From Octopus bimaculoides (Eukaryota), in assembly GCF_001194135.2 (NCBI RefSeq), contig NC_069005.1:454717-518716 (forward strand): a stretch of 64,000 bases of DNA, in the 5' to 3' direction. Below, one piece after another: positions 13,500 to 47,218 of the stretch. The position numbers and the translations under genes are program-made. Position 1 is the first letter of the stretch; the number at the start of each line of letters is the position of its first letter. The notes beneath the pieces were generated by a model. That model was not told the origin of the DNA. It searched no databases and saw only the letters and a program-made list of their open reading frames with translations.

Positions 13500-13760
13500 T
13501 GCCAGCCTCAACATCACTATTTTAAGACCTCCTCAACCAACTCTCATTCTTGCACGAGTTGGTTGGACAAGATTTTTCCAGAAATTCATTAGAACTTGTT
13601 AGGATTTCTTTCATGATGGTCAGCATTCTGAGTTCAATCTGCATCAGTTCTTTCCCTATCTGCCTCTTCTACAAGTTCCTGGTTCCACTTTAATCATTTG
13701 GCATTTCTTCATCCCAGCTGCCATCTCTCATCCGAATAACAGCAATAAAGGCTTATTCCT
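13500..13760 (-). mobile_element. RTE LINE 3'-end remnant
   Basis: IKVEPGTCRRGR..GK-like translation shared with other RTE 3' fragments in the window. Confidence 0.5.
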
Positions 13761-15120
13761 CTCTTGTGCACTGCGACAGACTCTTATGTCTAATTTATTT
13801 TTCTGAATGGGTGAGTGAGTGAGTGCGTGTGAAGTATGATTTCCACTCTTGAAAATCATGACAGATTTGGTAAATGATAATCACTTCATGTTGCCGGTTG
13901 TTATGTCAACAAGAGGTTTTTGTGAGTCACCCAATTTGAGTGAAATTGACCTCATTTACCAGACAACATCCGGTGCCTTTTATAAACATTTCTATAATAA
14001 ACTAATTAGTGTTAGCAAATGATAACAAGGGTTAATGAAGCTGGATAATATGAAATGTTCAGAGTCGTCTCCTTTGCAAAACTTTACTATTTTTCCTAGT
14101 CCCACATGTTTTAATATGGCTGTAACATGTAGATATATTCCAGTCTATCGTTAGATTATTTAAAAATGTAACCAACGACCTTTTATAAATGTCTACAGTT
14201 TTGTATGAAGGTAAAAACATGTTAAGAAGTTTCCTCTGCAGCCACATTGCTCTGAGTTTCTGGATTCAACCCCCACTGCTTGGTTCCCTGGACAAGGGTC
14301 TTCGACAGCTTCACATCAATCAGTTCCTTGTGAGACAGAAACTGTGCAGAAGCCTTTCATTCCCTCTTTGTTTCTCCATGCTAATATCAGTTGGTCAGGG
14401 AGGTAGTAGAAGCTGGATTTTTAGGGCTGGATGCTCTTCCTGTCACCAAACCTAATCTCTTTTCCAAATAAGGGACTTTCTACTCCAGAGGAATTCAAAT
14501 GTGCACAGCTGGAGGATGATTTGTTGAACAGGAAATGTCAACAAACGTCACCAGTTGCAACTCAACCTCAAACTTGTAATTGAGCCACAAACATTTATGT
14601 ATATCATCATCATCATCATCATCATCATCATTTTAATGTCCACTTTTCCATTTGTTGGTTGGAATGGGCTGAGACAGATTTTCTTTGGCCAGATATTGTT
14701 CCTGTCACCAGCTCTCACTTGTTTCCATGTAAGGTAATATCTCCCCCATGGTCAGACATGTTCTCACAAAAGAAAAAAAAAAATTTTAAAGCTGTGCTCC
14801 AGAATGACCAAAGTCCAATGAAAGAAACCAGTCAGAAAATATGATAATATTTTCTACCTGTTCTAAAGAATTTACAGTCAAAAGTGCCATGCGGTAGGAT
14901 TGAACTCCTAATGTTTACATTAGGAGTTCAAATTTGACTGACATCAACTTTGTTTTTCTTCTTTCTGGGGTTGAAATCAAGAAGAATTGCTTTTTTTCAT
15001 GAATTCTTAGAGAATCTCTTCACGGAAGATGAGATGATACACTGTACTGAAGTGGATTAACTAATCCATTAAAGACAAGGAGATGACACAGAATACAATA
15101 AAGGATCAAGCAAGCTTTCA

Positions 15121-15343
15121 TTAAACCTTAAGCATTGAAACTAGCCTAATCTGGCTCAAATATTCTACTTGTTTTATCTTAAAACTGGCTAGATCCTACC
15201 TCTCACACCTAGCCTACAATGTCATTTTAAAAATAAACAATCACATCAGTGAAATCTTGAAGCTACAAGATAATGCCTGATTCATTGAAAACGTGAATAA
15301 ATAATCATTAAATTTGAAATCTGAATGCTAAATAAAGGATTAA
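15121..15343 (-). mobile_element. Half copy of the piggyBac-like MITE
   Basis: Shares CTACAATGTCATT..AAAATAAACAATCAC..CTGAATGCTAAA with 47560-47753. Confidence 0.6.
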
Positions 15344-16151
15344 TTATTGATATGAGTCCACATGGCTTTGGTGAAGGGTTCAATGCTTTACTTCAGCCAA
15401 TGTTGGTGGAATCTTTCATAAAGCTTCATTAAAATAAACTTCCTGAAATATGTGGCTGCTGTTATTATAAACTCACCAAAAGCAACCATCATAGAACAAA
15501 CACAGTCAAAGGGAAATAAATCCGAATAAATCAAAACCGTTTTTTTTTTCCCAGCTGATATTTTTTGTTTCTTAAGATTTATCTCTTTTTGTTGGTGGCT
15601 GATATAAGGATTAGTTTCATTCTGGTTAGGATTTTGAAAGGAAAGGATATAATGCAAGATGGCACAAGTGTGGCTGTGGGGGTTAAGAAGTTTTTGTTTT
15701 TGTAACCATGTCGTCTTGGGTTCATGTCGTCTTGGGTTCATTCTCACTACATGGCTCCTTGGGCAAGTGTCCTTTACCACAGCTCTCACAAGGCTAACCA
15801 AAGGAAGGAGAATCCACTTTTAAATTTTAGAAGAACCAGGATCCAAATATCAAAAATTGTTGTTGTTACTGCATCTATGCACATCTCTCATCTCCACAGT
15901 CTTTCACAGAGGATTCAGAATTTTGATGGGAATTTTGCCAAAAGAAATTTGATGAATTCTATAGCCTAAATAGCTAACCAAATGAAACCTATTAATCACT
16001 CAGTGGCTAAAAGCATCTGATAAAATCGCTGATCTCTTTTAGGACATCGAACTGACCATCCCATTTTTATTTCGTTATTTTTTTAATTTTATTCTTTCTT
16101 CCCTAACCAAGCCTCCAACAATCGTTCATGTATGCTTTGTTTAAAAATTCA

Positions 16152-16187
<36 letters not shown>

Positions 16188-16332
16188 TCAAAATGACAAA
16201 GAACATCTGTCAGACCCATGCCAGCATAGGAAAGTGGACATGAAAAGGATGAAAATGAGGATGAATGTGTTTGACCAGGGCCAACCTAGGGCCAAAAAGA
16301 AAGAAAAGCAGTGACCCCCACCAGTGTCTTAC

Positions 16333-16540
16333 CTGTACACTATTGCCTTGCTCAATTGGTTGAATGTCCAGCTGTTTCAGAACAGGTGGTGTGTTGGACA
16401 AAGAATACATCTGTTCTCCAATCTCTTTCAAGGGTACAACAAGGTGTGGAGGGACGTAGTAGGTGGCCGGTGTCCAGTTGTACAAATTCCTTTTAGTTGC
16501 ATGCTGGAACAGTCCTGACACATGGTCTAAATGTCCATGG
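16333..16540 (-). CDS. TM-type short tRNase Z, coding exon 2 (His motif SHGHLDH)
   Basis: Acceptor taatag|C; AG+C=Ser gives ISHGHLDHVSGLFQHATKRNLYNWTPATYYVP, like plant TRZ1 THAHLDHIGGL...RGLY..PP.IFVP. Donor CAG|gtaaga. Confidence 0.93.
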
Positions 16541-17556
16541 CTATTAGAATGATTGGCAGCAACCGAAAACGAAAAAATAGAACAAAAAAAAAAAAGGAGA
16601 AAATAATTAATCACTAATCAAAACCTGAGTAAGTGCATGCATGTGTGTGTTTGGGGGGATATATCCTTTCCCAAGTGCAGAGAAGGGGAGTGTGGTACAG
16701 TTTAGTCTGGTCCCTGTAGATGTGTGTTCTAGAGATGATAATTGATCAAAGCCCCCATGAAAGTGAGGTGTCCTCACCTCAAGGGGGAATGTGAAGATGT
16801 TGCCTAAATGGAGAAGAGCTATAAGTAGAGAAACCATCACCCAGCCTCCCATTTATAGACTTCCCAATCAGCAGCCGACCCTCTTTTCTTCCTCTCCATT
16901 CCTTGATTCTGCTCCAACCACTTTCAGAAGCACTGGAAAGGAATCGAACTGACAAGCTACTTGCTTTGAATTACAAGGACTCAGGATTTTTTGTTCAAGT
17001 TGGGCTTCCATAGTGTTAAACTGATAAAAGATACATTTCTCCAGGATAAGAAGCTAGTTTTTCAGTAAGAACTGAACTCAGCAATAAAGTCCCAATAAAC
17101 GAATCCCTAATTTCCAAGTCTCTTATATTCTCTTTGGTTTCTAACTGAAGCTATGTGGACTTGACCCTTGACAATAAACTGTTCGTCCCACATTGTCATG
17201 CCGTTGTCATCTCACTTACAATTTCACTCCCTCCCATCCTTGCCAGTACTTCACTGTGTGTGAGTGTGTGTGTGTGTCTCACACACACAAAAGGCAATGG
17301 CTTTCAAAACAGTACAAATAGGCTGACAGGGATGGACACTGAAGAACAAGGTCTATTGTTAAATATTTAAATACAAGATAAAAAAAAGTGATTAATGGTT
17401 GGGGGAGGAGGTGTGGGGGGGTCCTTCAGCAGGTCAGGAAAATACTTCTCTTCTTCAACAAAGTAATCTGTCCATAATACTAAATACCAATACAGTAATG
17501 TACTATGCAAACACCTATTCCTTTTAGTTTGGGGTTTTTACCATCCACATCCTTGT

Positions 17557-17597
<41 letters not shown>

Positions 17598-17614
17598 TGA
17601 TGATCTTTCTTTAG

Positions 17615-18130
17615 CTAACCAGTCACTGCATACAAATATCATTAAGGCTAAAATAGACAAATCCGCAAAGAGTGCAAAGTGCAGAGTTTGTAACAAGAAA
17701 GGGGAATCCATTGTGCACAAAATGAGGTCATGAAGTCGTTTGGTGCAGAGGGAATATAGACACAGACCTTACTGTGTAGGCAAGGCCCTACAAAGGGACA
17801 TATAGACACAGACCTGAGTGTGTGGCCAAGGCCCCACAATGGGAACATAGACACAGACCTTACTGTGTAGGCAAGGCACGACAATGGGACATATAACAGC
17901 AAAGAGGATTTGAAATGGGAAGAAAATGGTAAGAACATGAACCAGAAAGTGTAATAGAGAATGACCAGAATAAGGTTTTATGGGATTTTAATGCACAGAC
18001 TGACTGCAAAATGCATGCCAGGTGACCAGATATTATGGTTCTGCACAAGTGGGGGGGGGAGTGCCTCATCATAGATATGGCTACATCTGTGGACATGAAT
18101 GTAGCAGTGAAAGAAGAGGAAAGAATGATT
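17615..18130 (+). mobile_element. R4/Dong-like non-LTR retrotransposon remnant (zinc knuckle plus REL endonuclease)
   Basis: KCRVCNKKGESIVH and NKVLWDFNAQTDCKMHAR*PDIMVLHK..CLIIDMA..D.NVAVKEEE. Confidence 0.75.
17751..17886. repeat. About 45-bp tandem repeat x3 inside the R4-like remnant
   Basis: Unit GGA(A/C)ATATAGACACAGACCTTACTGTGTAGGCAAGGCCCTACAA(A/T)G. Confidence 0.85.
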
Positions 18131-18494
18131 TGGCAAAGGAAATACAATGACTATGGATGACTTTTTCTACAAAAAGTCATCTCCTCTCTGAATCACAACC
18201 AAATCTGTATCACCAATATTCTATTGAACTCTTCTCTGTTCGAGGACAGGCATCAAGTATTCTCCATTATAGCGCCAAGAGCAGCAGAAAACAATGTCCA
18301 TTCTAACTTTATGCCTGAATAACATGAAACATTGTTTATTCTTAAGAAACATAAATAGAGAGTCATACAAGCAATGGTGTGTGGAACAATTCTTGCAGAG
18401 CAGAGAGGAGTTTTACAATTTTAGTAATTATTTTTGGATTAAAAAAAAAACTAACAATAATAAGCATGTTGTTTTGTCTTATATTACAAGTCTT

Positions 18495-18707
18495 CTTTCC
18501 TACTCTAGGCACTAGGCCCGAAATTTTTGGGGAGGGGGCCAGTCGATTAGATCACCCCCAGTACACAATTGGTACATAATTTATTGACCCCAAAAGGATG
18601 AAAGGCAAAGTCAACCTCGGTGGAATTTGAAAGTATAGACAGACGAAAGATTTCTAAGCATTTCGCCCAGTCTGCTAATGTTTCTACCAGCTCGCTGCCG
18701 CCTTCTA
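18495..18707 (-). mobile_element. SINE family A
   Basis: Reverse complement of the family A consensus. Confidence 0.7.
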
Positions 18708-19348
18708 CCCCAAGTCTTGTCACATCTGGGATGTCATACGAGAATATTAAATTGACCCCAGTACATGACTGGTATTCCATTGACTGACCTTTGAAGACGA
18801 AAAGCAAAGTTGGCTTCAATAAGATTTGCATTTGGAATGTGAAGAACTGCAATTCAATGCTCCTGCCATTTTGACCACATCCTGACAATGTTAGATTTTT
18901 ATTTTAGGATGATTGAAAATTAGAACCAGTAAGAATATCAAGAACCAATTCAGTCGACTCTATCCCTCACCTATATGTGTCACCTTAATAACATATAATT
19001 ATTATTATTTATGCGTTTCCATGCCTGTACATATTACAGTTATTTGTTTCTTCGCAAAGCAGTCTTATCTTAACGTTCCATTCTCTTTTACATGTCTACG
19101 AAGGGAGCGTCTCAGTATTTGTGTGACCTGTTTAATGTAAAGGAGAATCAATGACATTACACTCCCCACTTTCTTTGAAGTAGACACCATTACATTTTAG
19201 TGTAACACATTGAAGACAGGCACGGCGAGATAACACTAACCACTTTGTTCGTTCTGCTGTCGCCTGCGTCATGTGTTCAGCAACAACAACACGATAAACA
19301 TTATACACACTGGTTGTGAATGTTATATCAATATTCATAACGATGACG

Positions 19349-19530
19349 ACGACGGTGGTGGTGGTGGTGGTGGCAATGATGGTATTAAACGACGTGGTGG
19401 TGGTGGCAATGATGGTATTAAACGACGTGGTGGTGGTGGCAATGATGGTATTAGACGACGTGGTGGTGGTGGCAATGATGGTATTAGACGACGTGGTGGT
19501 GGTGGTGGCAATGATGGTATTAGACGACGT
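19349..19530. repeat. 33-bp minisatellite, about 5 copies
   Basis: Unit GGTATTA(A/G)ACGACGTGGTGGTGGTGGCAATGAT. Confidence 0.9.
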
Positions 19531-19576
19531 TTACATTGACAGCGATGAAAACTATTGCAAACTTGAAAACACCCAC

Positions 19577-20037
19577 CTTATGAAAACATGTTTACAGCGA
19601 ACACTCGCTCGGGTGGCGTAACCGATGTCAAAGGCAACCGACAAACTTTTGTCTTCGACCGTCTGCACCACGACACTTGTCTCCAGGCCCGAGAGGGACC
19701 AAGCATGCACCTGGTATTTACCGCAGGGCATCCAGTCTTTTCGAAGCTTCGATATTGCAGAGCTTTTGACCTTCGCAATATTGTTGTTCCGCTTGTCTGA
19801 GGTAGAGTTGTGATAACAGCTGCCACAAATCTTCATAACACCATGAATATCAGGTGTCTTTTTGCAATCAACAACCGGACGAGTGGCATTTTGGCAAGGT
19901 GTTAACAGGGAAAGACGTCCAACAGAGGAGAAAGTTCGAGTCCAACGGTTTACACCGGCAGAATGAAAAAACAGCTGAAAATCACAGAGACATCGTAGAG
20001 TGAGGGTCACGGTAGGGGTGACACATCGTAAAGACAT
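19577..20037 (-). CDS. TM-type short tRNase Z (metallo-beta-lactamase fold), coding exon 1 of 4
   Basis: ATG at 20037 (acaATG). Encodes an Arg/Ser/Thr-rich N-terminus, then HAWSLSGLETSVVV..AFDIG..VFI. Ends AG|gtgggt (phase 2) and splices in frame to the HxHxDH exon. Confidence 0.88.
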
Positions 20038-23516: not shown

Positions 23517-24617
23517 TCAGTGAATTACGAGGATGTTAGGCATCCCAAACAGTTGGTAATTTAGTGATTTGGCAATCTGAGCAAAGCCTTCGCTTTCTAG
23601 GTGATGGTTGACAAGATATGGTGGGAAGATAACTCCACGACGATGCACATTAGCATCAACCAACAGACAAGAGGACCCCACACCATCCAGACTGACCACT
23701 TTGCCCTCATGTTTTAGTTCAGGTAAATACTGTCGTAGAGACTTGTTCGTATAACCTTCCAGCATCAAATATCCGGGCTCTTTTGAATTTAAATATTCTT
23801 TTGATTCTTTGGTTTCTCGCCAGGAATTTCGGTCATAAATATCGAGAATGTTTGGTGCCTTTCGGTACATGCATGAAGGCACCACAATCGGGACGTGAGC
23901 GGAGAGTAAAGTTTGGATAAGATCTTGGGGCACTTCCCGAAGATCGCTGTCAAGCCAGAGGACGTATTTTTCATCGCGCAAAGCACTCATCAGAAGGAAG
24001 TTTCGAACTTGTGCCAACCTCCTGCGACGATTCAACTGAATTGTCTCGTTATGTTTGTCTGAATGGCTCGCCAACATAAGCGTTGCATCATCTGGAATGT
24101 CTAAATTGTAAACTTCAATAGAACGAAATTTGTGTGAAATCCTCGATATCTGCCGTTTAGCAAGTTTAGGGGAGGGGACTCCGTATTTATCAATGCCGAG
24201 TGCAATCCTCAGACGGCAATGGGGATAAGACAAGGAGTTCAGAAGATTGAAATATTGATGGAAAAAACTGGCGAAATTATCAAATGGAGTCAGTATGAGG
24301 ATTGATGGGAGGACAAAGAGGCACTCATTCTTGGTTTCAGAATCTGTCGTTGTGTATTGCATTCTGTCTGTGTTGGGTTGTGAAGTTACCTGTTGTGTAA
24401 CTGTCCGACAGGTTTGGTTGAGAAGACGGAACGTATGGTGGCGATAGGCTTTGGCTTCTCTCATGTGTAAGTGGTACAGACATATGTCTAACTTTAGTCG
24501 GGCATCAGTCCGAAAAATGTCAGCAGTTATGAGATAGGTAAGACTGGATGTAAGTACCACGATACAAAGCATCAGAAGATGCCAGGGTTTTTGGTAAAAT
24601 ATTTTCGGTAGATTCAT
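23517..24617 (-). CDS. Mnn9/Van1/Anp1-like (GT62) glycosyltransferase, type II membrane protein, intronless CDS
   Basis: 366-aa ORF with an N-terminal hydrophobic anchor (LLMLCIVVLTSSLTYLITA). Motifs ILILTP, RRRRLAQVRNFLL, YVLWLDSD (DXD), YDRNSW, LDGVGSSCLLV..VHRRGVIFP and ESEGFAQIAKSLNYQLFGMPN are collinear with yeast Mnn9 as recalled. Confidence 0.9.
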   Translation of the reverse strand: MNLPKIFYQKPWHLLMLCIVVLTSSLTYLITADIFRTDARLKLDICLYHLHMREAKAYRHHTFRLLNQTCRTVTQQVTSQPNTDRMQYTTTDSETKNECLFVLPSILILTPFDNFASFFHQYFNLLNSLSYPHCRLRIALGIDKYGVPSPKLAKRQISRISHKFRSIEVYNLDIPDDATLMLASHSDKHNETIQLNRRRRLAQVRNFLLMSALRDEKYVLWLDSDLREVPQDLIQTLLSAHVPIVVPSCMYRKAPNILDIYDRNSWRETKESKEYLNSKEPGYLMLEGYTNKSLRQYLPELKHEGKVVSLDGVGSSCLLVDANVHRRGVIFPPYLVNHHLESEGFAQIAKSLNYQLFGMPNILVIH

Positions 24618-24753
24618 GATTCTAGCAGAAGTCTTGGAGAAATCATTGAAATGGCTTCAACTCTCTATTCCATGGTAGTTATATTTCTGTTCCTTCTTTC
24701 TCACCATCAGATTTCTGTACAAGGTTCAATGGAAAGATTCAAAAGTTGCCATG

Positions 24754-25013
24754 CTAGATAAAAAATAAATAAAAGAAAAGAAAAAGGAAATTAAAAGGCC
24801 AGTAATTTGGGGAGAGGAGGTAAGTTGAATACATCGACCCCAGTGCATAACGGGTACTTATCTCATCGACTCCGAAAGGATTAAAAGCAAAGACGACTTC
24901 GGCAGAATTTGGAATAAAGTTCCGCTAAGCATTTTGTCCGGCATGCTAACGGTTCTGCCACCTCGCCGCCCTCTGTCGCTCCCTAATTTTATGGCAATTT
25001 TTACACGACTTAC
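24754..25013 (-). other. Probable 5'-UTR intron of the GT62-like gene (contains a SINE)
   Basis: Minus-strand donor ACAG|gtaagt at 25013. Long pyrimidine tract plus tatctag acceptor at 24754, 136 nt upstream of the ATG. Confidence 0.6.
24795..24975 (-). mobile_element. SINE family A within the GT62 5'-UTR intron
   Basis: Reverse complement of GAGGGCGGCGAGGTGGCAGAACCGTTAGCATGCCGG... Confidence 0.7.
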
Positions 25014-33961: not shown

Positions 33962-33986
33962 ATGCCGCTTTTCAAGAGGAAATCAG
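33962..33986 (+). CDS. AKAP10: A-kinase anchor protein 10, coding exon 1 (MPLFKRKS)
   Basis: aaaATG then MPLFKRKS, resembling vertebrate AKAP10 MSFFRRK. Strong donor TCAG|gtaaga; phase 1 matches the next exon. Confidence 0.72.
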
Positions 33987-34371
33987 GTAAGATGCGAGTT
34001 TCTTGTTTTAACAACACCAAATAGCTTAGTCAGGTTATTTGTTTTATATCAATCTCTCATCTATTTTCATCGTCTCACCTATCTCGTTCCGTTTACCTTA
34101 TTTATGATGTTGGATGTCTTATTAATTGTAAAACGATACTGAATGTGGTCATTGCAGCCAATGTTTTTGTGTGCATGTTATTGTATTATATCATAAAATA
34201 ATTGTGTTGTGTTTTCGTCGTCCTTGAAACAATCGTCACTGCCGTCTTGCTGAAGACGTTGTCTTTGGAGTTGCATGTGTCTTAAACGTCAGTGAAAACT
34301 CCACCCTCCTGGAAGGGTGACAATCCCCTCAAACAACTAACCTTTATTTATACATACATACATATGTATAT

Positions 34372-34435
<64 letters not shown>

Positions 34436-34815
34436 ACTCTCCCGTCCTAAATTCATTGTTAAAAGCATTAAATAAACTCGGTGCTGTATTATTATTACAC
34501 ATAGTATTTCTATTTAAAAGGTGCATCAAGTTAATATCCGTGTTTTGGACGCGGTCCCTTAATTATTTATTGTCTCTGCTCTCGTCTTTGCTGCATGTTG
34601 TGTTTCTGTTGTTGTCAAGGATTTTCAACATACCCACCTCCTTTNNNNNNNNNNNNNNNNNNNNNNNNNNNNNNNNNNNNNNNNNNNNNNNNNNNNNNNN
34701 NNNNNNNNNNNNNNNNNNNNNNNNNNNNNNNNNNNNNNNNNNNNNNNNNNNNNNNNNNNNNNNNNNNTTTTTTTTTTTTTTAACAGGAAACTCACTAAAA
34801 ATAATGTGGCGTGTA

Positions 34816-34850
<35 letters not shown>

Positions 34851-35049
34851 GTGGAGTAGATTGAGTCGGTTTCCTAGTTGAACACTATCACCTGGCATGG
34901 TGGATACCTTTCGTGGAGTCGTTCGGACCAGATCTTCACACTGAGGGTATCATCCTCCCTTCTTCCTCTAACAATCCAAAAAGGGCCATGGTCGTTCCTT
35001 CCTAACTGGCTAAAGATTACACACGCAAACACGTATGGATGTTTGTGTG

Positions 35050-35084
<35 letters not shown>

Positions 35085-36116
35085 AAACATCAGACAGACG
35101 CGGCGAGCAAGCCGAAACTTCGAAGTCACTATCAGTTCCTTGAAAATGTAGTAAATGCTCTCCACTAAAAAGCAGTGTGTGGTCCTTCAGTTAAATGTTT
35201 TTATGTATGGCTTGACTTTAAAAACAAACAAATGTGTGTATTTGAAGTGGCCACCAATTTTATAAAACAGGGAGGTGACAAATAAACCTTTTCGGATTGG
35301 AAGAATCGGAAAAAGATGGAGTATAAACAACAGACACCGAAGTGAAATGAATGTGATTCATTATTTATACTGTGGTGCGGTATTATTTTAGTTTATCTAA
35401 GAATGTGAAACCTGTGTTTGTTCAGTGATATAATAGTTCAGGGTAAGATGGATAAATAAGAATTTAGAGTACGAAGTCAAGATCGTGATGCTAGGAGGAC
35501 ATGTAGAATTTTTATTGAGTTATTATTATTATTATTTCAACGCTCTCTATATTCCACACAGTAATGTGTATACGTATATATATATTATGTAATTTTAAGT
35601 TGTGTTGTTGAATCAGAAGAAGTGGTGTGTCTCCTCTGCTAGTTTTCTAAATATGTCTCCGCCCACTCAAGCAGTTTTTTCCTATGAAATGAAACACAAA
35701 AATTTCCTTTCATGCACGGACTTCCGTGTTTTTAATTTCTCGATTAAAAACAAAAACAATGTGTCAATAAATACGTGATTTTCTTCCCATAATAACAACT
35801 GTTGCTTTGGTCGCCACGACCAGAAAGATGCACCACCCCCAGGCCAGATTCTCCCTGGTCGAGCCCCAAAAATGTATAAAACCACTTTAGAATCGAAACT
35901 GTCCCGTTGTTTTGTTTTTTGTTTGTTTTGGTAGACTCCGGCCAGAAGTGATGTGGCGAGAATGCGTACCTCCTGGGGCAGGGTATCAGTTTCCTGACTC
36001 CCCGAACCCCGGGCTCCCCACCAAAAATACAGGTTTATACAGCGTTGCCCGAGGTGGACCGCCCCTTCGTCCAACCCCTACTACAGTTTATGTCCTTATG
36101 TCCAGTTATGTCCTTA

Positions 36117-36165
<49 letters not shown>

Positions 36166-39100
36166 GATGCTAATGTACGATCTGAGGCGAATTTTGCTAT
36201 TGTTTCTGACGAACCAGCGAGCGGCCGTGTAAGAGACTTTCTCCATAGTTGTCATCCATAATATTTCTTGTCTGTTTATAGTGCAGAGGGGGGTGGGCAA
36301 TGATTGCTTCTATTTGTGCCAAACGGAAATCAAAACCAATAACGATACAACAAAATAGGTGAGGCTAATGTCTCGAGCGAAGTAATATATATTCTTGGAT
36401 AGATAGATAGATAGATAGATATAATTAATGGTGTTTCACTGCTTTCGGATCAAAAGGTTTTCATTTTAATATTTGCCTTTACAACTTCCAATTAATTCTC
36501 GATAAAAAAAAAAAATTCTTAAAACACCGATCCGTTTAAATCTGGTTAATTGACTTTTACCTTTCGTCTCTTGGGATTGATAAAAAAAATATCTGTAATG
36601 TTCTGGGATCGATTCAAAATTTATATTTATATATATATATATAAATCGTACGGTATTTTGTTTATTATTTGCTATTAATTCTGACTACCCTGCCTTTTTA
36701 TTTATTTATTTGCTAACATATTTCATGCAGTGTGCGGTTCAACTTGTTGCTTATGTCAGCAACGACCTTCTTAGGCTGACGACATATTACTGTTGTTGTT
36801 GTTGTTATTATTATTATTATTATCATTATTTTTATTATAAATATTATTATCATTATCAGATACGTGTGTGTGCACGCGCGTATGTGTATCTGTACACACA
36901 CACTCACACACGAAAGCTAATGCCGCAGAACGATTTCGTTGTCGGTTGTGGAGAGGTCTTTCTATGAAGCAGTGCCAACACTACGATGTTTATCCTCGTG
37001 TGCCCACATCTGTAGTGTGTGTGTGTAAGGTAGACTCTCTCGTATGAGTTGAGAAAGCTTCAACTAATTAAGATTATCTAAGCAGTTAGTGGACAAAATC
37101 TCCCTCTAGGCGTGTTAAAAACCTGAAAGACAAGGGATTCAATTCCACTAAAATCAAATAATCAAATTTTTTTTTTAAATAAAAGTGTCGAATCGTGTCT
37201 GGTTTTTGAATCCAACTGGTGAAAGTAATGTACATGTTCCTGTCTCATTAAACCTCTTCAACTAAGCATCTACTCAGTTGGCAAGACTTAGAACGATTTA
37301 GTTGGTTTGTTTGTTTTAACGTCCGTTTTTCCATGTTTACATGGGTTAGATGAATATGTTATTGAAGTATTGTTTTACAATGCTAGATGCCTTTCCTATC
37401 TCTAACCATTACTTGTGAAGAATATTTTATTCCCTGTGGCTTCAGAGGCATGAATCCAGAAAATAATCTGTTGATGAGAGCTGACAACAATATCACCTAC
37501 AAATTGCAACTTAGCTAGATGCAAGCAAGCTATATTGTCATCGTCAATGTTTTGGTGTTCATTTTTCCATGCTGGCATGGGCCAGGTGGAGTTTGCTGAG
37601 GCATATTTTCTGTAGCTGGATGCCCTCCCTGTAGCCAACCTACACTTGTTTCCCAGTAAGCTAATATTTCCTCATGGCAGGACACATTTTCATAGAAGAT
37701 TGGAAACAAAGAACACCACTTGTATGAAGGTGACACTCGTTTACAACTGTCATGTGATGTCAAGGAAAAAGTGACACACACACACACTCACCCCACCATA
37801 TGCACACACACATGCACACGCACACCTACATTTTCCGGTTAGCATTATTCTTGGTATGGTTCCAGTAGTGGTGCACTGGTTCAGGGGTTCCAGTGTTTTG
37901 ATTAAAGAAAAGAATGTTTGTTAGTTCAATGGATTCGTTTATCTCAGACGTTGTGGGTTAAAATGACTTTTGTGTAAGATAGATTTACTTTCTATAAGGG
38001 TAGATTTTAACATGAACTNNNNNNNNNNNNNNNNNNNNNNNNNNNNNNNNNNNNNNNNNNNNNNNNNNNNNNNNNNNNNNNNNNNNNNNNNNNTGGGGTG
38101 GGGGTGAATAAGACCTGAGATTTATCAATGTCTTGTGATCAATTATATTTATCTATTGATTTAAATTTTATCTGAAGGTTTTTTGAAGTAAAAAACTGAA
38201 TTGACAATCATAGCATTTGAACTTTAGAACTTTCTAATATCATCTACACAAACAATACCACATCAGTGAGAAAGCCTATATCCAGTCACTCAGCTTGCTA
38301 GAAATAGCAGCAAAATCTCTCTTTTGTCTTGAAAAAGGAAAACAAGGGTGTTTTATATGTAGTCCTAGATGCATTATGTCTCAGAACCATAGATGTGATG
38401 GTCAAGGTTGTAATGACTTTGATCAGATATGTATGGTCATATGTGACCTAGGGTTAAACACTAATAACAGTCATTAGAGACTTAGTTTTGATCTCTGAAA
38501 GAAGCCGAGAACTTTGTTGCTTAGTTATATGGCTCTTGTTGTTAGCCGTGGGTCTGTTGATGTTTCGCCAATCGGTCAGTCGAATGATTTCACAGCCATA
38601 GTGAAAGTGACCCGTCGAGGAAGCCGAGCAATCCCAACAAACCCAACAGTTTGTCAAATCTGTTTTACTTGGAGGAGACGTAAATTCTGTGAGGTACCAG
38701 CAATTGAGGCAGCCCACTTAGAGGAGCAAGGAAGTGATTCAGCGTTGAGGACAGGCACTTAAGCCTTGACTGATGACAACCTCTCAAATGCTTGTGATGG
38801 GATAAAATGCATACAATCCATGCTGTGCAAAAGTGGCTAAATTTATGAAACCAAAATAAACAGCTTATATAGTAAAATTAATCAGTTTTATTCTGTTACT
38901 GGAATGAAGGGCAGTAATTAGGGGTCAGGAGGCATTGTGAGGCCTGTTTGACCTTTCAGTGTAAGAAGAAATGGACATAAAACACTGCTACGTGTGGTGG
39001 TGGTGGTGGCACTAAGGAGTCTTCTTGGTCCAATAAGTTAGCCTCTGCATGGTTGCTCACCCTGCTAGAAATAACAAACTCCCCTTAAATCACATCAAGA

Positions 39101-39385
39101 TAACAGCAATGTAGTAGTGGTAGTAGTAGTAGTAGTAGTAGTAGTAAGTGTTAGATACCCTGGGTGATCATGGTTACTGTGTTACTGATTATAAAAGACT
39201 ATACAATGAAATGCTTGTATTTGGGTTAAACAACATAAGTCTCCCTACTGGATGAGTTATTTCTATTTCAAACATAAACACTTTTCTGTGTCGCACATAT
39301 TTTAAATGCTTTGGTTTGTTGAGTTTTATTCTTTTTGATTCTCAATTCAAATATGAGACATTATCAATGAAACCANNNNNNNNNN

Positions 39386-39426
<41 letters not shown>

Positions 39427-41759
39427 ATATATGGTTGAGGGTAGCAGTTGTGATTGACCTAAAAGAAGATGGAGGCAACCACTCTACCTGTGGGGCATGG
39501 CAGTATTTTGGTTGGCATCGGTTACTTCAGAAGGGTTAGAAAAGGGTCTGTAAAAAGGGAATAAAGTTTCAGCTAAAATGTTCTTTTACTCATGTATGTG
39601 TGTGCATATACATGCACACACATACATATACACACATTCACCAGAATGTTCCATGCTGGTTCTAAATATCTCATGCCATCAACACATGACTAACAAAATA
39701 CTCCACCAAGACATCCAATATATCAGAGAGAGACAACAATATGACCACCCGGGCTGTGATTTATTGGTCAGTGTTATAAAGAAGAGTCTGGTTGCTCTTG
39801 TATGGCAACCTTTTATTTTTGTATTTCTTTGTGTTATAAACTTTACTTCCAAATGTCAGTTTTACGTCCTGCCAGGATCAGCTTCCTCTTTCATCCATCT
39901 CGTATCAATAAACTAAAGCACCAGTGTTGAGTACTGACGTAGATCTGATTGACTATAACCCTTCATCACAAATCTAAAGCCTTGTGCTTGGGATGGAAGT
40001 TAATTTTATGCTTCTGCTACAACTTAGACTCATGAGTCATTGCCATTCTATGCTGTTTGTTTATAGCCACAGCTGGACTCTACCATTAAGAATGGAGAGT
40101 TTTAAGGACATGCGGCAAGACACTGTAAAAGTTGATTATAATTATCTGTAACTCCAAATCACTGATGTGATCTCTTTAATTCCATACATTTAATTGTTGA
40201 TGGACATTGCACCGTCTTTACCCTTATCAAAGACGGTTGATTAAAGTCAACTCTTGATTTCACTTATCAGTCCACACTTGTTTTCATTAATTAGTTTTTA
40301 ATAAGTACAAATGTAACATGTACTCACCCTTCGTTACCATATTTCTCTCAAAATATCTTTGTCATTATTATTATGAAACTGATGTTTGGAAGATGAATTA
40401 ACATGAAATTCTGATGTGCCTCGCGAGTGAAATTGTGAGATGGTTACTGTGCTGAAACCCTTCGTATGCCTCTGTGTGTGTGTGTGTGATTCTCCAGGAA
40501 GCTGGCTTGTAAGAACCTATTTCTTATTCAGGAAGGGCATCTCCCTCAGATATTTAATATTTGTAATTCATATATGTGTACGTGTGTGTGTGTGTGTGTG
40601 TGTGTCTTGAACATCTTTGGAAAAATGGTGTCTATGTTCATATCCCATAACTTAGTGGTATAACAAATAGAGATTGTTAAAATAAACACCAGACTTTAAA
40701 ATATAAGTTGTGTGTGTGGTGTCATTTTGGTTGAGTGGAGCCTTTCAAATCATTGCCCCAGCATGGCCACAATCCAGACTGACTGACTGAAACCATCAAA
40801 ACATTAAAAGAGTATCAGTAGTGTGAGATAAGGCAGATTCAGCTGCTACTTTTGGCAGGTCAAGCAAAGCAACTGCATAAAGGCTTCTCTCAAGGCTTGC
40901 TGGTGTATCATGGGATGTGTCTGTTTAGATTTCATTTTGTTTGTTCTACGCACAGATATTTCCTTCTTGCTATTTTTGTTTGCTGCTATTTGTTCTGTCC
41001 CACTGCAACCATTGCTTTATCATCTAATCTTGGCAAGCTTGCAGTTACCTTCAGCTCAGCATCATATCCCCATCTACCGCAATTGTCTCTGAGCACTCAC
41101 CTCCCTATCACTGTGACTGTTTCTCCTGGGCCTTCCTTGGCCTTTACTCACCTCTGAGCACTTTCTGTAGCAAGGACCCCCTTCCAGCACCTTTTTTTCA
41201 CTGAGCATCCATTCACAATTACACATCAATGCTTATATAATTAATTCTCTTTCCTGCACACCTCAACAAAAGTATTCAACATTCAGTTACCTTTCCAACT
41301 CATTTTTACGCTGCCTTTCATCTTTCTTGCAAGTTGACATAAATTGTGATTAATGTCTCCACAAACTAGATTTACATTCCAAATTCACTGCTGAACCGAC
41401 TAACCTTGTCCAAAGGCCCACCATTAATGACCATGGGATCCCTAGTCTCTTTAACTTCATAACCGTTTAGTGATGTCTATTTGTTTCAAAGTACATTGCT
41501 GCATGTAGCAAGGTCCTTATATATATATATATATATATAGAATGTTTGTACTTTAAGGGGTTCTACAAACCCCTTAATTATGGAGCCCTGCATTGTGTAC
41601 TTGTACTCAAATAATTGTATAATATTGTTTTTGATGTTGCTATTGTTGTTGTTGTTCTAGTGTTAGACATTTACTTTTCAATATTATAAACCCATGTTTG
41701 TGATCTTGACCATTTTCTGTTTGTTTCGATTTTTTTCCTCTTTATGATGTGTAATTTTG

Positions 41760-42060
41760 TTTAAATTCTCTCTGGTACCGATTGGTCATTTTTAGGAAAC
41801 GTTTCCAATTCCTGGTTTCATTTTGCCAAAGCTAAACCACTGCCGCCTGGTAAGACCTTCCAAATACTCTCGCTTCTCTGCTTCCTGTTCTCTTTTAACT
41901 CTTTCCTTTAAAGTCTTGGAGCTGGACAACTCTTCTATTCTTTTATTGAACTCGGTACTAAGTCGCTTTTTCGGTAGAAGAGACTCGTATTGATATTGGT
42001 AGATTACTGATATTTATTTCTGTTAAGGCATTTGGTACACTTCAGACAAAATGCTGCCCT
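41760..42060 (-). mobile_element. Probable LINE ORF2 C-terminal remnant
   Basis: Open frame ..SKTLKERVKREQEAEKREYLEGLTRRQWFSFGKMKPG resembles the K.L..Y...K.....E.YL..L.R.QR..F.K.R.G region of L2/CR1-type LINEs as recalled; in-frame stops lie upstream. Confidence 0.4.
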
Positions 42061-42083
42061 CCACTACGCTAAATATTAGTTGT

Positions 42084-42148
42084 AATTATGGTTTGCAATT
42101 ATGGTTTGCAATTATGGTTTGCAATTATGGTTTGTAATTATGGTTTGC
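42084..42148. repeat. 13-bp tandem repeat x5 (AATTATGGTTTGC)
   Basis: Direct inspection. Confidence 0.9.
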
Positions 42149-42588
42149 AAAGTCTGCTGGCATTTATGAAGGATATTTGAGTGTAAACCACAGCTACCAT
42201 AAAAGTAATGTCTTCAAACAGCTTACCACAAGTGGTTTGGCTGCTATTTCTTGCGGGTGAAGTGATCACATAATGGCTTTCTCTCAGCTTGAGGTCACGT
42301 AACTAAATATTCTACAACAGTAAGTTTGTTAAAATTTCATGAAATGGAATAAATTATTTTAGTTTCATCTGCTTCCTTCCTGCAATTAGCTCACAAACGG
42401 GATTCAACTGGGAGTTTATTTTCTGCTTGATGATTCTAGCCAAACATTGAGAATATAAAACTGGAAATAAATATCAAATGGATGGAATCTCTCTCAGTTT
42501 CAATAATGAGAATTCAATCATTTAATCACCTGGAATTGCTGCTCATTGAATTGTCATGTGACCGAATATTCCACAGACACATGTAATC

Positions 42589-42805
42589 TTAACCCTTTAG
42601 CATTCAGATTATTCTGTCAAATTTAATCCTTATTTATTCACATTGTTTTCAACTAATCCTGCATTATCTTGTAGCTTCGAGATTTTGATGATGTGATCAG
42701 TAGTAATTAGTGTGACATTATAGGATAGGTGTGAAAGGCCAGATCTGTTTTGAACATAAAACAAGTAGAATATCAGGGCAGGGGTATGGCTAGTTTAAAG
42801 GTTAA
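42589..42805 (+). mobile_element. Half copy of the piggyBac-like MITE
   Basis: Starts TTAA|CCCTTTAGCATTCAG and ends AAAGG|TTAA. Confidence 0.7.
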
Positions 42806-44003
42806 AGAGTAGAGTAATTCTCAAAACAGAATCAGTGTGACAAGGCTGGACATTTGACTCACTGGTAGAATTCATTTGATGGGCTTCTTTACAGTTTCCA
42901 TTTACCCAACTTTACTAACAAGGTATGGCCTGAGGTTGACCTGGGGATTGTGCAAAATGATATTTAACCAAAATGTCACACAGTGAGATGGAATAATTTG
43001 CCTGAGAGATGACAAGGGGGCATGCCTGTTAACCCCTTTTGTTACCCTTTTTCTGTTGAGATTCTCTGTGTTCCTTTCAGTTAATTCTAAATATAACAAA
43101 GAATTTAGTAAAATAACTGTTTAATAAGATAAACTGTTGAGAGTGGGAAGCCTTTACAAGATCATTTGACCTGCTGAAAATAGCAGCTAAAACACCCTCA
43201 GATTTCATTCTGATGACTTAAAATACAGAATGGTTCATTGAGCAATAGAGTCTATAACAAGGTCATGGGTGTAATGTGCTTGATTAGGTTCTATCATCTA
43301 ATGATGTCATGCTTATTCTTTTGTTTGTTTTTTTGCTATTTTGCTGCTGCTGCTACTACTACTACTACTACTACTACATTTATTTTGTTCTACTTTGTTT
43401 TATGATATTCTTGTTCTGCAAGTTCCCACAATTTGACTGCAGCCTTCAAAGGTTTTAGTCAGTTGACCCCCCCCNNNNNNNNNNCTTCAGCCTGGTACTT
43501 ATTTGATCAATCTCTGTTTATCTACTGGTAGGTCACCTAGCTTTTTTTTTATAACATCAGTTTTTACACTGCTTAACAATAAACACACACACACACATCT
43601 CTCTGTCTATTTGTTTGTGTAGATATTTTGTAAATTGTAAACCGGAACCTTCTCTGTGACCGAGTTTCATGTTTCCAGCCTATGAGAATGTGAAACCTGG
43701 AGTAATTGTTTGTGAAGTTTTTAGCTTAGAGTAAATAGGACCAAATGGACGAGTAAATTGGGCGAAATATTGTAATATTTTGTTTTTGAGTAGCCTTTTT
43801 ACTCCTCCTCCTTTGCCCAATTCTTTGGAGCATAACATAAATGCATGCACACACACACACAGCGCTGTTTAATTTCACTTTGATAGCACAAACTGGTAAT
43901 TAAAAGCATTCCAACCGTGACCAACCCCACTTTTCCTATGTCCAGCACGAATATTATCCAATGGGTTCTTTGTGTGCATGGGTGTGAGTGTGTTGATTTG
44001 AGG

Positions 44004-44228
44004 CAGCGTTTCTCAACTGGGTTTCCCTGGAACCCTAGGGTCCCATGAGAAAGAGTGAGATAAACTAATGCTAATTTCATGATGGTAGTATTACTATACA
44101 TACACAACATATTATTGTAATATTGTAATATAGACATCATCCTATCTAACCTATTATGTTATTAAGAAAATATAACAACCATTGGGAATATATTAGAGAT
44201 GTCTGTAATATATGGACACCGTGTACTA

Positions 44229-44287
<59 letters not shown>

Positions 44288-44421
44288 GTGATATTTACCA
44301 CGTGAACTATGATGAAGGAAATATGAGAAAGTCATGGTATATAATTTTTTTGGTGCAGGCATTCTTTCAGAAGTAATTTATTTTAAGGGTTACACAAGGG
44401 TAAAAAGGTTGAGAAACACAA
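44004..44421. mobile_element. hAT-type MITE with perfect 8-bp target-site duplication
   Basis: TIRs CAGCGTTTCTCAAC / GTTGAGAAACACAA; TSD ATTTGAGG at 43996-44003 and 44422-44429. Confidence 0.85.
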
Positions 44422-44828
44422 ATTTGAGGGTTTGGTTGCTATTTCTAGCACTGAATGACCATATAGAGGCTCCTTCTATGGTTCATGCTAGTGATGGTGG
44501 TGGTAGTGGTGGTGATGATAATGCTGATGATGATTTACTAATTCCAATATATTTTATTGATCTAAATCCATTTTGGTTAGTGAAGCATTTAGCATAACAA
44601 TATTTGGTGTTCTTAATGTGAAACTAGTGCAATTCTGTTGCACTATGTTGAAACTGGTGCACATTTGTTGCACATTCATCTTTTGAGTGCTTTCCAGTCA
44701 ATTACCTGTTCATTGATGTCATTCTATGGCGAAGAAGAAGTTCCATTTGCAATCATTCCATTCTAGGTTCAATCTCACTGTGTGGTACATTCAAGGAAAG
44801 CCCCCTCTCTCTCTCTCTCTCTCTCTCT

Positions 44829-44866
<38 letters not shown>

Positions 44867-47186: not shown

Positions 47187-47218
<32 letters not shown>

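What the first reader, a model, noticed from the sequence alone, without database searches (positions are those of the whole stretch)
23517..24617. Fungal-type mannan-polymerase (GT62, Mnn9/Van1/Anp1) glycosyltransferase with an intronless CDS
Seen: an intact 366-aa type II membrane ORF with a DXD motif and all recalled Anp1-family blocks, encoded in a single coding exon in an intron-rich neighbourhood. Established: in yeasts, Mnn9/Van1/Anp1 form Golgi M-Pol I/II complexes that extend the alpha-1,6-mannan backbone primed by Och1; vertebrates and the standard invertebrate models lack this pathway. Inference: either an undescribed animal mannosylation or polysaccharide pathway (mucus, egg case, skin glycans) or a repurposed GT62. 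The intronless CDS fits horizontal transfer or retroposition.
Basis: partly seen in the sequence, partly recalled or inferred. Interest (0 to 1): 0.7.

Follow-up and report, generated by a model that had tools for sequence, protein, structure and literature searches.

The report
Octopus GT62 (Mnn9-like) mannosyltransferase gene
This is a real, conserved octopus gene for a Golgi sugar-adding enzyme of the family that builds yeast cell-wall mannan; it belongs to an old, unstudied branch of that family shared by molluscs, annelids and ribbon worms, so it is not a recent import from a fungus.

Summary
Window 23517-24617 (-) is an intact 366-aa ORF matching Pfam Anp1/GT62 (E=1.4e-51). Its closest solved structure is yeast Mnn9, by sequence and by predicted fold. 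It has one N-terminal membrane anchor. All five residues shown to be essential in ScMnn9 are present: R197, D223-x-D225, D262 and H366.

The window is Octopus bimaculoides chromosomal DNA, with flanks that align to O. sinensis.

The gene is not "fungal-type" by descent and is not a recent HGT or retrogene. It belongs to a lophotrochozoan GT62 clade (NJ bootstrap 82%) that is separate from fungi (94%). Named members come from cephalopods, chitons, gastropods, bivalves, annelids and a nemertean. Octopods carry two paralogues, A (this gene) and B.

The single-exon CDS is shared by every relative checked, across three phyla and both paralogues. A cephalopod-like relative has spliced 5'UTR transcripts. 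An AKAP10-like RGS neighbour lies head-to-head with the gene in both octopus and chiton. dN/dS between octopus species is 0.12.

The most likely function is a Mn2+-dependent, GDP-mannose-using retaining mannosyltransferase of the Golgi; its acceptor is unknown. The deep origin is unresolved: either one ancient transfer or opisthokont inheritance followed by many losses.

Databases already auto-name these genes "mnn9-like". The literature I could search does not describe them.

The parts
23517..24617 (-). Complete CDS (366 codons plus TGA) of GT62/Anp1-family glycosyltransferase, octopod paralogue A
   Evidence: ORF; Pfam Anp1 E=1.4e-51; ScMnn9 3zf8 E=4.9e-32; 94% identical to the O. sinensis 'mannan polymerase complex subunit mnn9' protein; dN/dS 0.115 against O. 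sinensis
24513..24584 (-). Signal-anchor / transmembrane segment (about aa 12-35), preceded by an 11-aa basic cytoplasmic tail
   Evidence: The only Kyte-Doolittle 19-residue windows above 1.6 start at residues 12-17, peak 2.18; the AF2 model has a long N-terminal helix at 11-72
23520..24317 (-). Luminal GT-A catalytic domain (aa 101-366); the protein ends on the Mn2+-ligand histidine H366
   Evidence: Pfam match 101-334; PDB alignment 99-366; AF2 pLDDT above 90 over most of it; Foldseek best hit 3zf8, E=2.4e-24, TM 0.75 normalised by target
23943..23951 (-). DXD motif D223-S-D225 (equivalent to ScMnn9 D236-x-D238)
   Evidence: Alignment to 3zf8, whose D236N mutant is inactive (PMC3787745); invariant in 74 of 74 aligned family members
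24618..24753 (-). 5'UTR part of the coding exon; contains short uORFs, including a 10-codon uORF at 24614-24646 that overlaps the start codon
   Evidence: Sequence; three-octopod alignment. The upstream ATG used in the O. sinensis model is out of frame here and is GTG in a third octopod, so MNLPK is the conserved start
24754..24795 (-). Probable 3' splice acceptor (polypyrimidine tract plus AG) of a 5'UTR intron
   Evidence: The tract and 'TCTAG|C' are conserved in three octopods. The equivalent acceptor is proven in a cephalopod-like relative by comparing transcript and genomic contigs. No octopus transcript was available, so this is inferred
24796..24995 (.). Interspersed SINE-like repeat inside the presumed 5'UTR intron
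   Evidence: Diverged copies at 1779-1949 and 58269-58364; alignments to O. sinensis and another octopod break at 24795
33962..55110 (+). Neighbouring multi-exon RGS-domain (AKAP10-like) gene, head-to-head with the GT62 gene; it continues beyond 55110
   Evidence: Gene call of 772 aa with Pfam RGS in L005; exons 51077-52117 and 54706-55110 hit RGS weakly; exon 51014-52114 is 67% identical (E=1e-28) to the RGS gene next to the Liolophura GT62 gene
13517..20037 (-). Downstream multi-exon metallo-beta-lactamase-fold gene (393 aa); it continues below 13517
   Evidence: Gene call in L005 with Lactamase_B_2; exon ORF 16210-16614 hits Lactamase_B_2 weakly

Best explanation
This is a genuine, functional Octopus bimaculoides nuclear gene for a type II Golgi membrane glycosyltransferase of CAZy family GT62 (Pfam Anp1). 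Shown here: it has the Mnn9 GT-A fold and the complete set of residues that ScMnn9 needs for catalysis. It is under purifying selection. It is one of two octopod paralogues, A and B. It belongs to an old lophotrochozoan GT62 clade, inherited vertically at least since the common ancestor of cephalopods and chitons and probably since the common ancestor of molluscs, annelids and nemerteans. Inferred from the family: the luminal domain binds GDP-mannose through Mn2+ held by D225 and the C-terminal H366, and transfers alpha-mannose with retention of configuration, most likely in alpha-1,6 linkage, to a glycan on a secretory-pathway substrate. It may work as a hetero-oligomer with paralogue B, as Mnn9 does with Van1. 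The acceptor and product are unknown. The intronless CDS is an ancestral trait of the whole animal clade and is not a mark of recent transfer.
For: Family and chemistry: Pfam Anp1 E=1.4e-51. ScMnn9 is the only PDB sequence hit, E=4.9e-32. The AF2 model has pLDDT 86, and its best Foldseek hit is 3zf8 at E=2.4e-24, ten orders of magnitude ahead of the next fold. R197, D223, D225, D262 and H366 correspond to ScMnn9 R209, D236, D238, D280 and H389. All of these except D238, the metal-binding DxD carboxylate, were shown to be essential. All five positions are invariant in 74 of 74 aligned members. There is a single N-terminal TM segment and three luminal N-x-S/T sequons.

Genuine host gene: the window is 100% identical to the O. 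bimaculoides chromosome CM046625.1. The non-coding flanks align to O. sinensis at 85-91%. Host interspersed repeats abut the gene.

Constraint: dN/dS is 0.115, 0.167 and 0.182 for the three pairs among three octopods.

Age and vertical descent: named relatives are from Mollusca (four classes), Annelida and Nemertea. NJ bootstrap support is 82% for the lophotrochozoan clade, 94% for fungi, 97% for cephalopod A plus chiton, and 95% for mollusc group B. The RGS neighbour lies head-to-head in octopus and chiton, with exon-level homology at E=1e-28. The CDS is single-exon in O. sinensis A, O. vulgaris B, Mya, Owenia, Lineus, Liolophura and a cephalopod-like relative.

Expression: a relative with 53% identity has transcript-like contigs from three runs carrying a spliced 5'UTR exon.
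Against: There is no biochemical or glycomic evidence. Yeast-type mannan has not been reported in molluscs; a review of mollusc N-glycans mentions none and names no such enzyme. I had no octopus transcript, so expression in this species is inferred from selection and from a relative. I could not test for partners such as Och1, Mnn10 or Mnn11. The trees are neighbour-joining on about 250 columns. Several unnamed metagenome or SRA sequences sit inside the 'lophotrochozoan' clade and I could not assign them to taxa. Absence from other animal phyla rests on the names attached to only a fraction of hits.
Confidence: 0.78

Rival explanations
1. Ancient horizontal acquisition: a single GT62 gene entered the stem lineage of Lophotrochozoa (or Spiralia) from a fungus, alga or other protist as an intronless gene, then duplicated and has been inherited vertically since. 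This concerns only the deep origin and is compatible with the best explanation.
For: Among named animal hits only Mollusca, Annelida and Nemertea appear. Vertical descent from an opisthokont ancestor would need many independent losses. All members checked have single-exon CDSs. GT62 is patchy outside fungi, and its presence in green algae has been published as HGT. The nearest unnamed outgroup examined lies on a compact AP2-bearing eukaryote contig.
Against: No donor clade encloses the animal sequences. Fungi form a separate clade (94%), and identity to the window protein is about the same (34-37%) for the Dikarya, Mucoromycota and Capsaspora proteins listed. A holozoan, Capsaspora, has the family, so it could be ancestral to opisthokonts. 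The animal-type hairpin motif was not found in 185,579 prokaryotic genomes.
Confidence: 0.4
2. Vertical inheritance from the opisthokont (or older eukaryotic) ancestor, with loss in most animal lineages and retention in Lophotrochozoa.
For: The family is present in Fungi (Dikarya, Mucoromycota, Zoopagomycota) and in the filasterean Capsaspora. The lophotrochozoan clade is not nested in any of them.
Against: This requires at least five or six independent losses in animals. In the NJ tree Capsaspora does not come out as sister to the animal clade. No non-lophotrochozoan animal was seen among named hits.
Confidence: 0.4
3. Recent HGT from a fungus into octopus, or fungal contamination of the assembly.
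For: The intronless CDS; the family is best known from yeasts; automated names read 'mnn9'.
Against: The best fungal identity is only about 34-37%. The gene has orthologues in O. sinensis, Argonauta and a chiton with shared flanks or a shared neighbour. It sits on a 35-Mb chromosome between intron-bearing animal genes. Octopus repeats abut it.
Confidence: 0.02
4. Lineage-specific retrogene: a processed copy of an intron-bearing parental GT62 gene.
For: The single-exon CDS in an intron-rich region.
Against: No parent with introns was seen. Octopod paralogue B is also single-exon, as are the annelid, nemertean, chiton and bivalve genes. There is no poly(A) tract after the 3'UTR. The only bracketing direct repeat is a 14-nt A-rich match. 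The gene has its own 5'UTR intron, at least in a cephalopod-like relative.
Confidence: 0.03
5. A repurposed GT62: same fold and metal site, but a different donor sugar or a non-N-glycan acceptor (mucin, egg-case or matrix polysaccharide, glycolipid), so the product is not an alpha-1,6-mannan.
For: No yeast-like mannan is reported in molluscs. The Mnn9 hairpin loop, proposed to position the acceptor, is about eight residues shorter here. The clade is only 30-37% identical to characterised enzymes. There are large bivalve expansions: at least six genes in Mercenaria.
Against: The residues lining the mannose site in ScMnn9 (R209, D236, D280) are all kept. To my knowledge every characterised GT62 enzyme uses GDP-Man.
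Confidence: 0.3

Closest known systems
Saccharomyces cerevisiae Mnn9 (GT62; PDB 3zf8), a subunit of mannan polymerases M-Pol I and II
   Same: Same Pfam family. It is the best sequence match and the best fold match among solved structures. Type II topology is shared. The DxD motif, R209, D280 and the C-terminal-region His389 equivalents are all conserved. A beta-hairpin is present at the equivalent place, strands 244-254 and 257-260.
   Different: Identity is only about 30%. The octopus protein is not an orthologue, because the lophotrochozoan clade lies outside the fungal clade. Its hairpin is shorter. The protein ends exactly at the catalytic His. No cell wall exists in the host, and the Och1/Van1/Mnn10/Mnn11/Hoc1 context is unknown.
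Anp1-domain proteins of early-diverging fungi (Mucoromycota, Zoopagomycota) and of Capsaspora owczarzaki
   Same: These were the highest-scoring named non-animal hits to the animal-based profile, at E of about 1e-100 for the fungi and 1e-85 for Capsaspora. Length and architecture are similar. Their functions are also uncharacterised.
   Different: They fall in separate clades in the NJ tree. Identity to the window protein is 32-36%.
Automatically named lophotrochozoan proteins: 'mannan polymerase complex subunit mnn9(-like)' in Octopus sinensis, O. vulgaris, Argonauta and Haliotis, 'anp1 subunit-like' in Pecten and Mizuhopecten, and 'MNN9' in Mytilus edulis
   Same: These are the true orthologues and paralogues of the window gene. 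O. sinensis is 94% identical, with colinear flanks.
   Different: They exist only as pipeline annotations. I found no paper describing them. One survey of Golgi N-glycosylation genes states that PF03452 occurs only in fungi.
GT62 (MNN9) genes of green algae (Sphaeropleales), reported as HGT-derived
   Same: A precedent for GT62 outside fungi and for an HGT reading of its patchy distribution.
   Different: A different recipient lineage. I did not test the relationship to the animal clade.

Membership tests
CAZy GT62 / Pfam Anp1 (PF03452) | Match to the family HMM above the curated threshold | tested here: met
   175.9 bits against a cut-off of 28.8, E=1.4e-51, profile positions 18-262 of 263
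CAZy GT62 / Pfam Anp1 (PF03452) | GT-A fold of the Mnn9 type, including the extra beta-hairpin | tested here: met
   AF2 pLDDT 86. Foldseek top hit 3zf8, E=2.4e-24, TM 0.75 by target, rmsd 3.2. Hairpin strands at 244-254 and 257-260. The loop is about 8 residues shorter than in ScMnn9
CAZy GT62 / Pfam Anp1 (PF03452) | DxD motif, Mn2+-ligand His and mannose-site Arg and Asp (ScMnn9 R209, D236, D238, D280, H389) | tested here: met
   R197, D223, D225, D262 and H366 by alignment to 3zf8 and the mutagenesis in PMC3787745; invariant in 74 of 74 sequences
CAZy GT62 / Pfam Anp1 (PF03452) | Type II membrane protein with a short cytoplasmic tail | tested here: met
   A single hydrophobic segment at about residues 12-35 and none elsewhere
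CAZy GT62 / Pfam Anp1 (PF03452) | Retaining alpha-mannosyltransferase activity with GDP-Man and Mn2+ | not testable with these tools
   Needs an enzyme assay
Yeast mannan polymerase M-Pol I/II complex (Mnn9-Van1; Mnn9-Anp1-Mnn10-Mnn11-Hoc1) | Orthology to fungal Mnn9, Van1 or Anp1 | tested here: not met
   The lophotrochozoan sequences form their own clade (82%) outside the fungal clade (94%). Paralogues A and B arose within animals: group B has 95% support inside the animal clade
Yeast mannan polymerase M-Pol I/II complex (Mnn9-Van1; Mnn9-Anp1-Mnn10-Mnn11-Hoc1) | A second GT62 subunit available for a heterodimer | tested here: inconclusive
   Paralogue B exists in O. vulgaris (P0323) and Argonauta (P0040) with all catalytic residues. 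It is not in this window. Physical interaction was not tested
Yeast mannan polymerase M-Pol I/II complex (Mnn9-Van1; Mnn9-Anp1-Mnn10-Mnn11-Hoc1) | Presence of Och1 (GT32) initiator and the Mnn10/Mnn11 (GT34) and Hoc1 partners in the same genome | not tested
   No tool searches the octopus proteome or genome as a whole
Horizontally transferred gene (recent) | Nested within a donor clade, narrow recipient range, no conserved synteny with relatives | tested here: not met
   Not nested in fungi. Present in three phyla. The RGS neighbour is shared with a chiton
Processed retrogene | Intron-bearing parent gene, poly(A) remnant, target-site duplication | tested here: not met
   All relatives checked are single-exon. 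There is no poly(A) tract. There are only chance-level short repeats. A 5'UTR intron is present in a relative

The most novel reading that the evidence does not exclude
Lophotrochozoans (molluscs, annelids, nemerteans) have kept for over 500 million years a family of catalytically intact GT62 'mannan-polymerase-like' enzymes. The family has two ancient mollusc paralogue groups and large bivalve expansions. Under this reading the enzymes act as A/B hetero-oligomers in the Golgi and build an alpha-mannose-based glycan or polysaccharide that has not yet been described in animals. The family would have entered the lophotrochozoan stem by one ancient horizontal transfer, making it a clade-defining biochemical innovation.
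Probability: 0.25. Interest if true: 0.65.

Novelty: new member of a known kind. Interest (0 to 1): 0.42.

Why it matters
In the literature I could search, GT62 is treated as a fungal family; one survey states that PF03452 is found only in fungi. Reviews of mollusc glycosylation list no such enzyme. This work shows that an intact, selected GT62 gene in octopus belongs to a clade spanning three lophotrochozoan phyla, with conserved synteny. That points to a missing piece of invertebrate glycobiology: a mannosyl extension step or polymer with an unknown product. It also gives a clean test case of ancient HGT against differential loss. On the practical side, it warns against reading 'intronless plus fungal-looking' as recent transfer, and against taking pipeline names such as 'mannan polymerase complex subunit mnn9' as statements of function. 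The finding is modest: the family, fold and chemistry are known, and the genes are already in databases.

Tried and rejected
1. Contamination or recent fungal HGT was rejected.

2. A recent retrogene was rejected.

3. I looked for transcripts of the exact O. bimaculoides protein and found only the genome record. The 87%-identical octopod contig L006 turned out to be genomic, not cDNA.

4. I tried to name the unnamed nearest relatives. Three cluster look-ups named only 9 of 30 proteins. ENA, JGI and Logan records carry no taxon names, so P0006, P0029, P0031, P0038 and P0050 inside the 'lophotrochozoan' clade remain unassigned.

5. The profile search with A2 was swamped by Mucoromycota and did not return several of its own query members.

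6. Two scans of prokaryotic genomes found nothing: one with the animal-type motif and one with a JGI protein of unknown origin. I therefore make no claim about bacterial GT62 relatives.

7. Literature searches for GT62, Mnn9 or PF03452 in animals found no description. The search was too loose and uninformative.

8. RGS synteny in Owenia could not be verified at sequence level, because only 354 nt of that gene lay in the fetched locus.

9. No second Anp1-like copy or pseudogene exists in the window.

10. A direct repeat bracketing the gene (23312-23325 and 24783-24796) was judged a chance A-rich match.
Full report
OBSERVATION. Pfam Anp1 (PF03452, the GT62 domain) matches residues 101-334 at E=1.4e-51, with 175.9 bits against a curated cut-off of 28.8. 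The only solved structure found by sequence is S. cerevisiae Mnn9 (3zf8, E=4.9e-32, query residues 99-366). Hydropathy analysis shows one membrane-spanning segment at about residues 12-35 and three N-x-S/T sequons on the luminal side. The DXD motif is D223-S-D225.

PROVENANCE. The window is 100% identical to Octopus bimaculoides assembly GCA_001194135.2, chromosome CM046625.1, near 0.47 Mb. It contains ten N-gaps. The gene lies between two intron-bearing animal genes. One is an RGS-domain (AKAP10-like) gene of 772 aa that starts at 33962 on the plus strand. The other is a metallo-beta-lactamase-fold gene of 393 aa at 20037 and below on the minus strand. The non-coding flanks align colinearly with the O. 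sinensis orthologous locus at 85-91% identity. An interspersed SINE-like repeat with other copies in the window abuts the gene at 24796-24995. This excludes contamination.

FAMILY MEMBERSHIP AND CHEMISTRY. I predicted a structure with AlphaFold2 from a 40-sequence alignment (A2). The model has mean pLDDT 86; only the stem region, residues 63-95, is disordered. Its best match in the PDB is ScMnn9 at E=2.4e-24, TM 0.75 normalised by target and 30% identity. The next folds, COLGALT1 and other GT-A enzymes, are ten orders of magnitude weaker. Striebeck et al. 2013 (PMC3787745) showed that ScMnn9 R209, D236, D280 and H389 are each required for activity and that Mn2+ is bound by the DxD carboxylate and H389. 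In the alignment the chain numbering is offset by 90 from ScMnn9 numbering. On that basis these residues correspond to octopus R197, D223 (with D225), D262 and H366. All are invariant in the 74 family members I aligned, including both octopod paralogues, Capsaspora and fungi. The protein ends on the metal-binding histidine. The Mnn9-specific beta-hairpin is present (strands 244-254 and 257-260) but is about eight residues shorter. Every sequence and structure criterion for GT62 is met. The activity itself (GDP-Man, retaining, probably alpha-1,6) is inferred from the family.

GENE STRUCTURE. The CDS is a single exon. The gene, however, is probably not intronless. A conserved polypyrimidine tract plus AG ends at 24754, 136 nt upstream of the ATG, and it is conserved in three octopods. 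In a relative with 53% identity that groups as sister to the octopods, transcript-like contigs from three sequencing runs carry an upstream exon joined 72 nt before the ATG. At that same point two genomic contigs show ...TTTTATTGCAG|. This proves transcription and a spliced 5'UTR in that lineage. The ten-residue N-terminal extension in the O. sinensis RefSeq model is not conserved. In O. bimaculoides that ATG is out of frame by one base and forms a 10-codon uORF overlapping the start; in a third octopod it is GTG. MNLPK is therefore the real start. There is no poly(A) tract after the 3'UTR and no convincing target-site duplication.

DISTRIBUTION AND PHYLOGENY. An exhaustive HMMER search of 1.84 billion representative proteins gave 946 hits at E<=1e-3. 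About 60 of them scored above the best fungal Mnn9. Every animal name I recovered belongs to Lophotrochozoa:
- Cephalopods: O. sinensis, O. vulgaris, Argonauta.
- A chiton: Liolophura, with three genes.
- Gastropods: Haliotis, Patella, Lottia, Batillaria, Littorina, Nucella, Babylonia.
- Bivalves: Mytilus, Pecten, Mizuhopecten, Argopecten, Ylistrum, Saccostrea, Pinctada, Potamilus, Ruditapes, Mya (at least 4 genes), Mercenaria (at least 6 genes).
- Annelids: Owenia, Capitella.
- A nemertean: Lineus, with two genes.
These names come, with taxonomy confirmed. Named non-animal relatives are Capsaspora, Mucoromycota, Zoopagomycota and the Dikarya Mnn9/Anp1 proteins. One unnamed relative lies on a compact, AP2-bearing eukaryotic contig.

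I built a neighbour-joining tree on about 250 domain columns (the support values below are from 150 bootstrap replicates). It gives:
- a lophotrochozoan clade at 82% support (including a few unnamed sequences);
- a separate fungal clade at 94%;
- cephalopod A plus Liolophura_1 at 97%;
- a mollusc 'group B' at 95%, which contains O. vulgaris B (P0323) and Argonauta B (P0040).
Octopods therefore have two old paralogues, and the window holds A only.

SYNTENY AND INTRONS ACROSS PHYLA. The CDS is single-exon (gene span equals CDS length) in O. sinensis A, O. vulgaris B, Mya, Owenia, Lineus, Liolophura and the cephalopod-like relative P0005. In the chiton the A-type gene is head-to-head with a 770-aa RGS gene 1.8 kb away. 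An exon of that gene is 67% identical (E=1e-28) to the octopus RGS exon at 51014-52114. Octopus has the same head-to-head arrangement, 9.3 kb apart. Owenia also has an RGS gene next to its GT62 gene, but too little of it was fetched to confirm homology. Intronlessness and the genomic neighbourhood are therefore ancestral features that predate at least the cephalopod-chiton split. The gene has been inherited vertically since then.

SELECTION. Nei-Gojobori dN/dS is 0.115 for O. bimaculoides against O. sinensis (dS 0.245). It is 0.182 for O. bimaculoides and 0.167 for O. sinensis against a third octopod. This is clear purifying selection on the protein.

MECHANISM. My best-supported reading has shown and inferred parts.
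- Shown: a type II membrane protein with a short basic tail, a helical and disordered stem, and a luminal GT-A domain with an intact Mn2+ and nucleotide-sugar site.
- Inferred from ScMnn9 and the rest of GT62: Golgi residence; GDP-mannose as donor; retention of configuration with alpha-1,6 linkage; a glycan acceptor on proteins or polymers in the secretory pathway; and possibly obligate pairing with paralogue B, by analogy with Mnn9-Van1, where Mnn9 both primes and activates its partner.
The product is unknown. Mollusc N-glycans are described as high-mannose or paucimannose with methylated mannose, xylose and fucose, and no yeast-like mannan is reported. The shortened hairpin, which was proposed to position the acceptor in yeast, is where specificity most plausibly differs.

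ORIGIN. Recent HGT, contamination and recent retroposition are refuted. The deep origin is open. A single ancient transfer into the lophotrochozoan stem is favoured by the restricted animal distribution, by universal intronlessness, and by a published precedent for GT62 HGT into green algae. Opisthokont inheritance with many losses is favoured by the presence in Capsaspora and all major fungal groups, and by the lack of any enclosing donor clade. I rate the two about equal.

COMPARISON AND NOVELTY. This gene works like, and is a member of, GT62. It is not an orthologue of Mnn9, Van1 or Anp1, and I cannot call it part of a mannan-polymerase complex. The orthologues are already in public databases under automatic names such as 'mannan polymerase complex subunit mnn9' in O. 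sinensis and 'anp1 subunit-like' in scallops. I found no paper describing animal GT62, and one survey states that the domain is confined to fungi. I therefore class it as a new member of a known kind, of moderate interest as a pointer to an uncharacterised lophotrochozoan glycan.

LIMITS.
- The trees are neighbour-joining only.
- Many close relatives are unnamed.
- Absence from other animal phyla is not proven.
- I had no octopus RNA evidence.
- I could not search the whole genome for pathway partners.

Noticed in passing
window 24796-24995 (also 1779-1949 and 58269-58364): An interspersed SINE-like repeat lies immediately upstream of the putative splice acceptor. Alignments to O. sinensis and another octopod both break at 24795, and O. 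sinensis carries about 2.6 kb of extra DNA there (L001 7235-9853).
   Followed up: partly
window 24614-24646 (-): The upstream ATG used as the start in the O. sinensis RefSeq model (which adds MISPKTSARI) is shifted by 1 nt in O. bimaculoides. It forms a 10-codon uORF whose stop overlaps the main start (ATGA). In a third octopod the codon is GTG. The annotated O. sinensis N-terminus is probably wrong.
   Followed up: yes
window 33962 to beyond 55110 (+); L015 1-6177; L013 16745-17098: An AKAP10-like RGS gene lies head-to-head with the GT62 gene in octopus (9.3 kb apart) and in the chiton Liolophura (1.8 kb apart). An RGS gene also neighbours the Owenia GT62 gene. This may reflect an ancient shared bidirectional promoter.
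   Followed up: partly
L014 6417-15020 (Lineus longissimus): The nemertean GT62 gene P0046 is nested, on the same strand, inside the first intron of the ribosomal protein S4 gene.
   Followed up: no
L002 10001-18292 (Mya arenaria); Mercenaria proteins: Bivalves have expanded the family. Mya has a tandem pair, one single-exon and one modelled with introns. Mercenaria has at least six paralogues, five of them on the same 88-Mb contig and four with pairwise-adjacent locus numbers.
   Followed up: no
window 45922-46410 (-): By eye this 162-aa ORF looks like the C-terminal half of a Tc1/mariner-type DDE transposase, lying inside an intron of the RGS gene. Pfam gave no hit at E<=0.01.
   Followed up: partly
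window 938-1640, 3807-3862, 22140-22635, 28780-29190, 34645-34767, 38019-38093, 39376-39385, 43475-43484, 48633-49012, 60160-60922: Ten assembly gaps (N runs), mostly flanked by (TA)n or (CA)n microsatellites. One lies only about 0.9 kb downstream of the GT62 stop codon, so the end of the 3'UTR may be incomplete.
   Followed up: no
L016 (JGI metagenome contig, 121 kb): An unnamed GT62 relative from one of the unnamed groups outside the animal clade lies on a gene-dense, intron-poor eukaryotic contig with an AP2-domain gene, SPT16 and an exportin. It looks like a picoeukaryotic green alga, so GT62 is more widespread in protists than the literature implies.
   Followed up: partly
AF2 model of window 23520-24617: After ScMnn9, the next structural matches are human collagen galactosyltransferase COLGALT1 (GT25) chains at E of about 1e-13, ahead of other GT-A families.
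   Followed up: no
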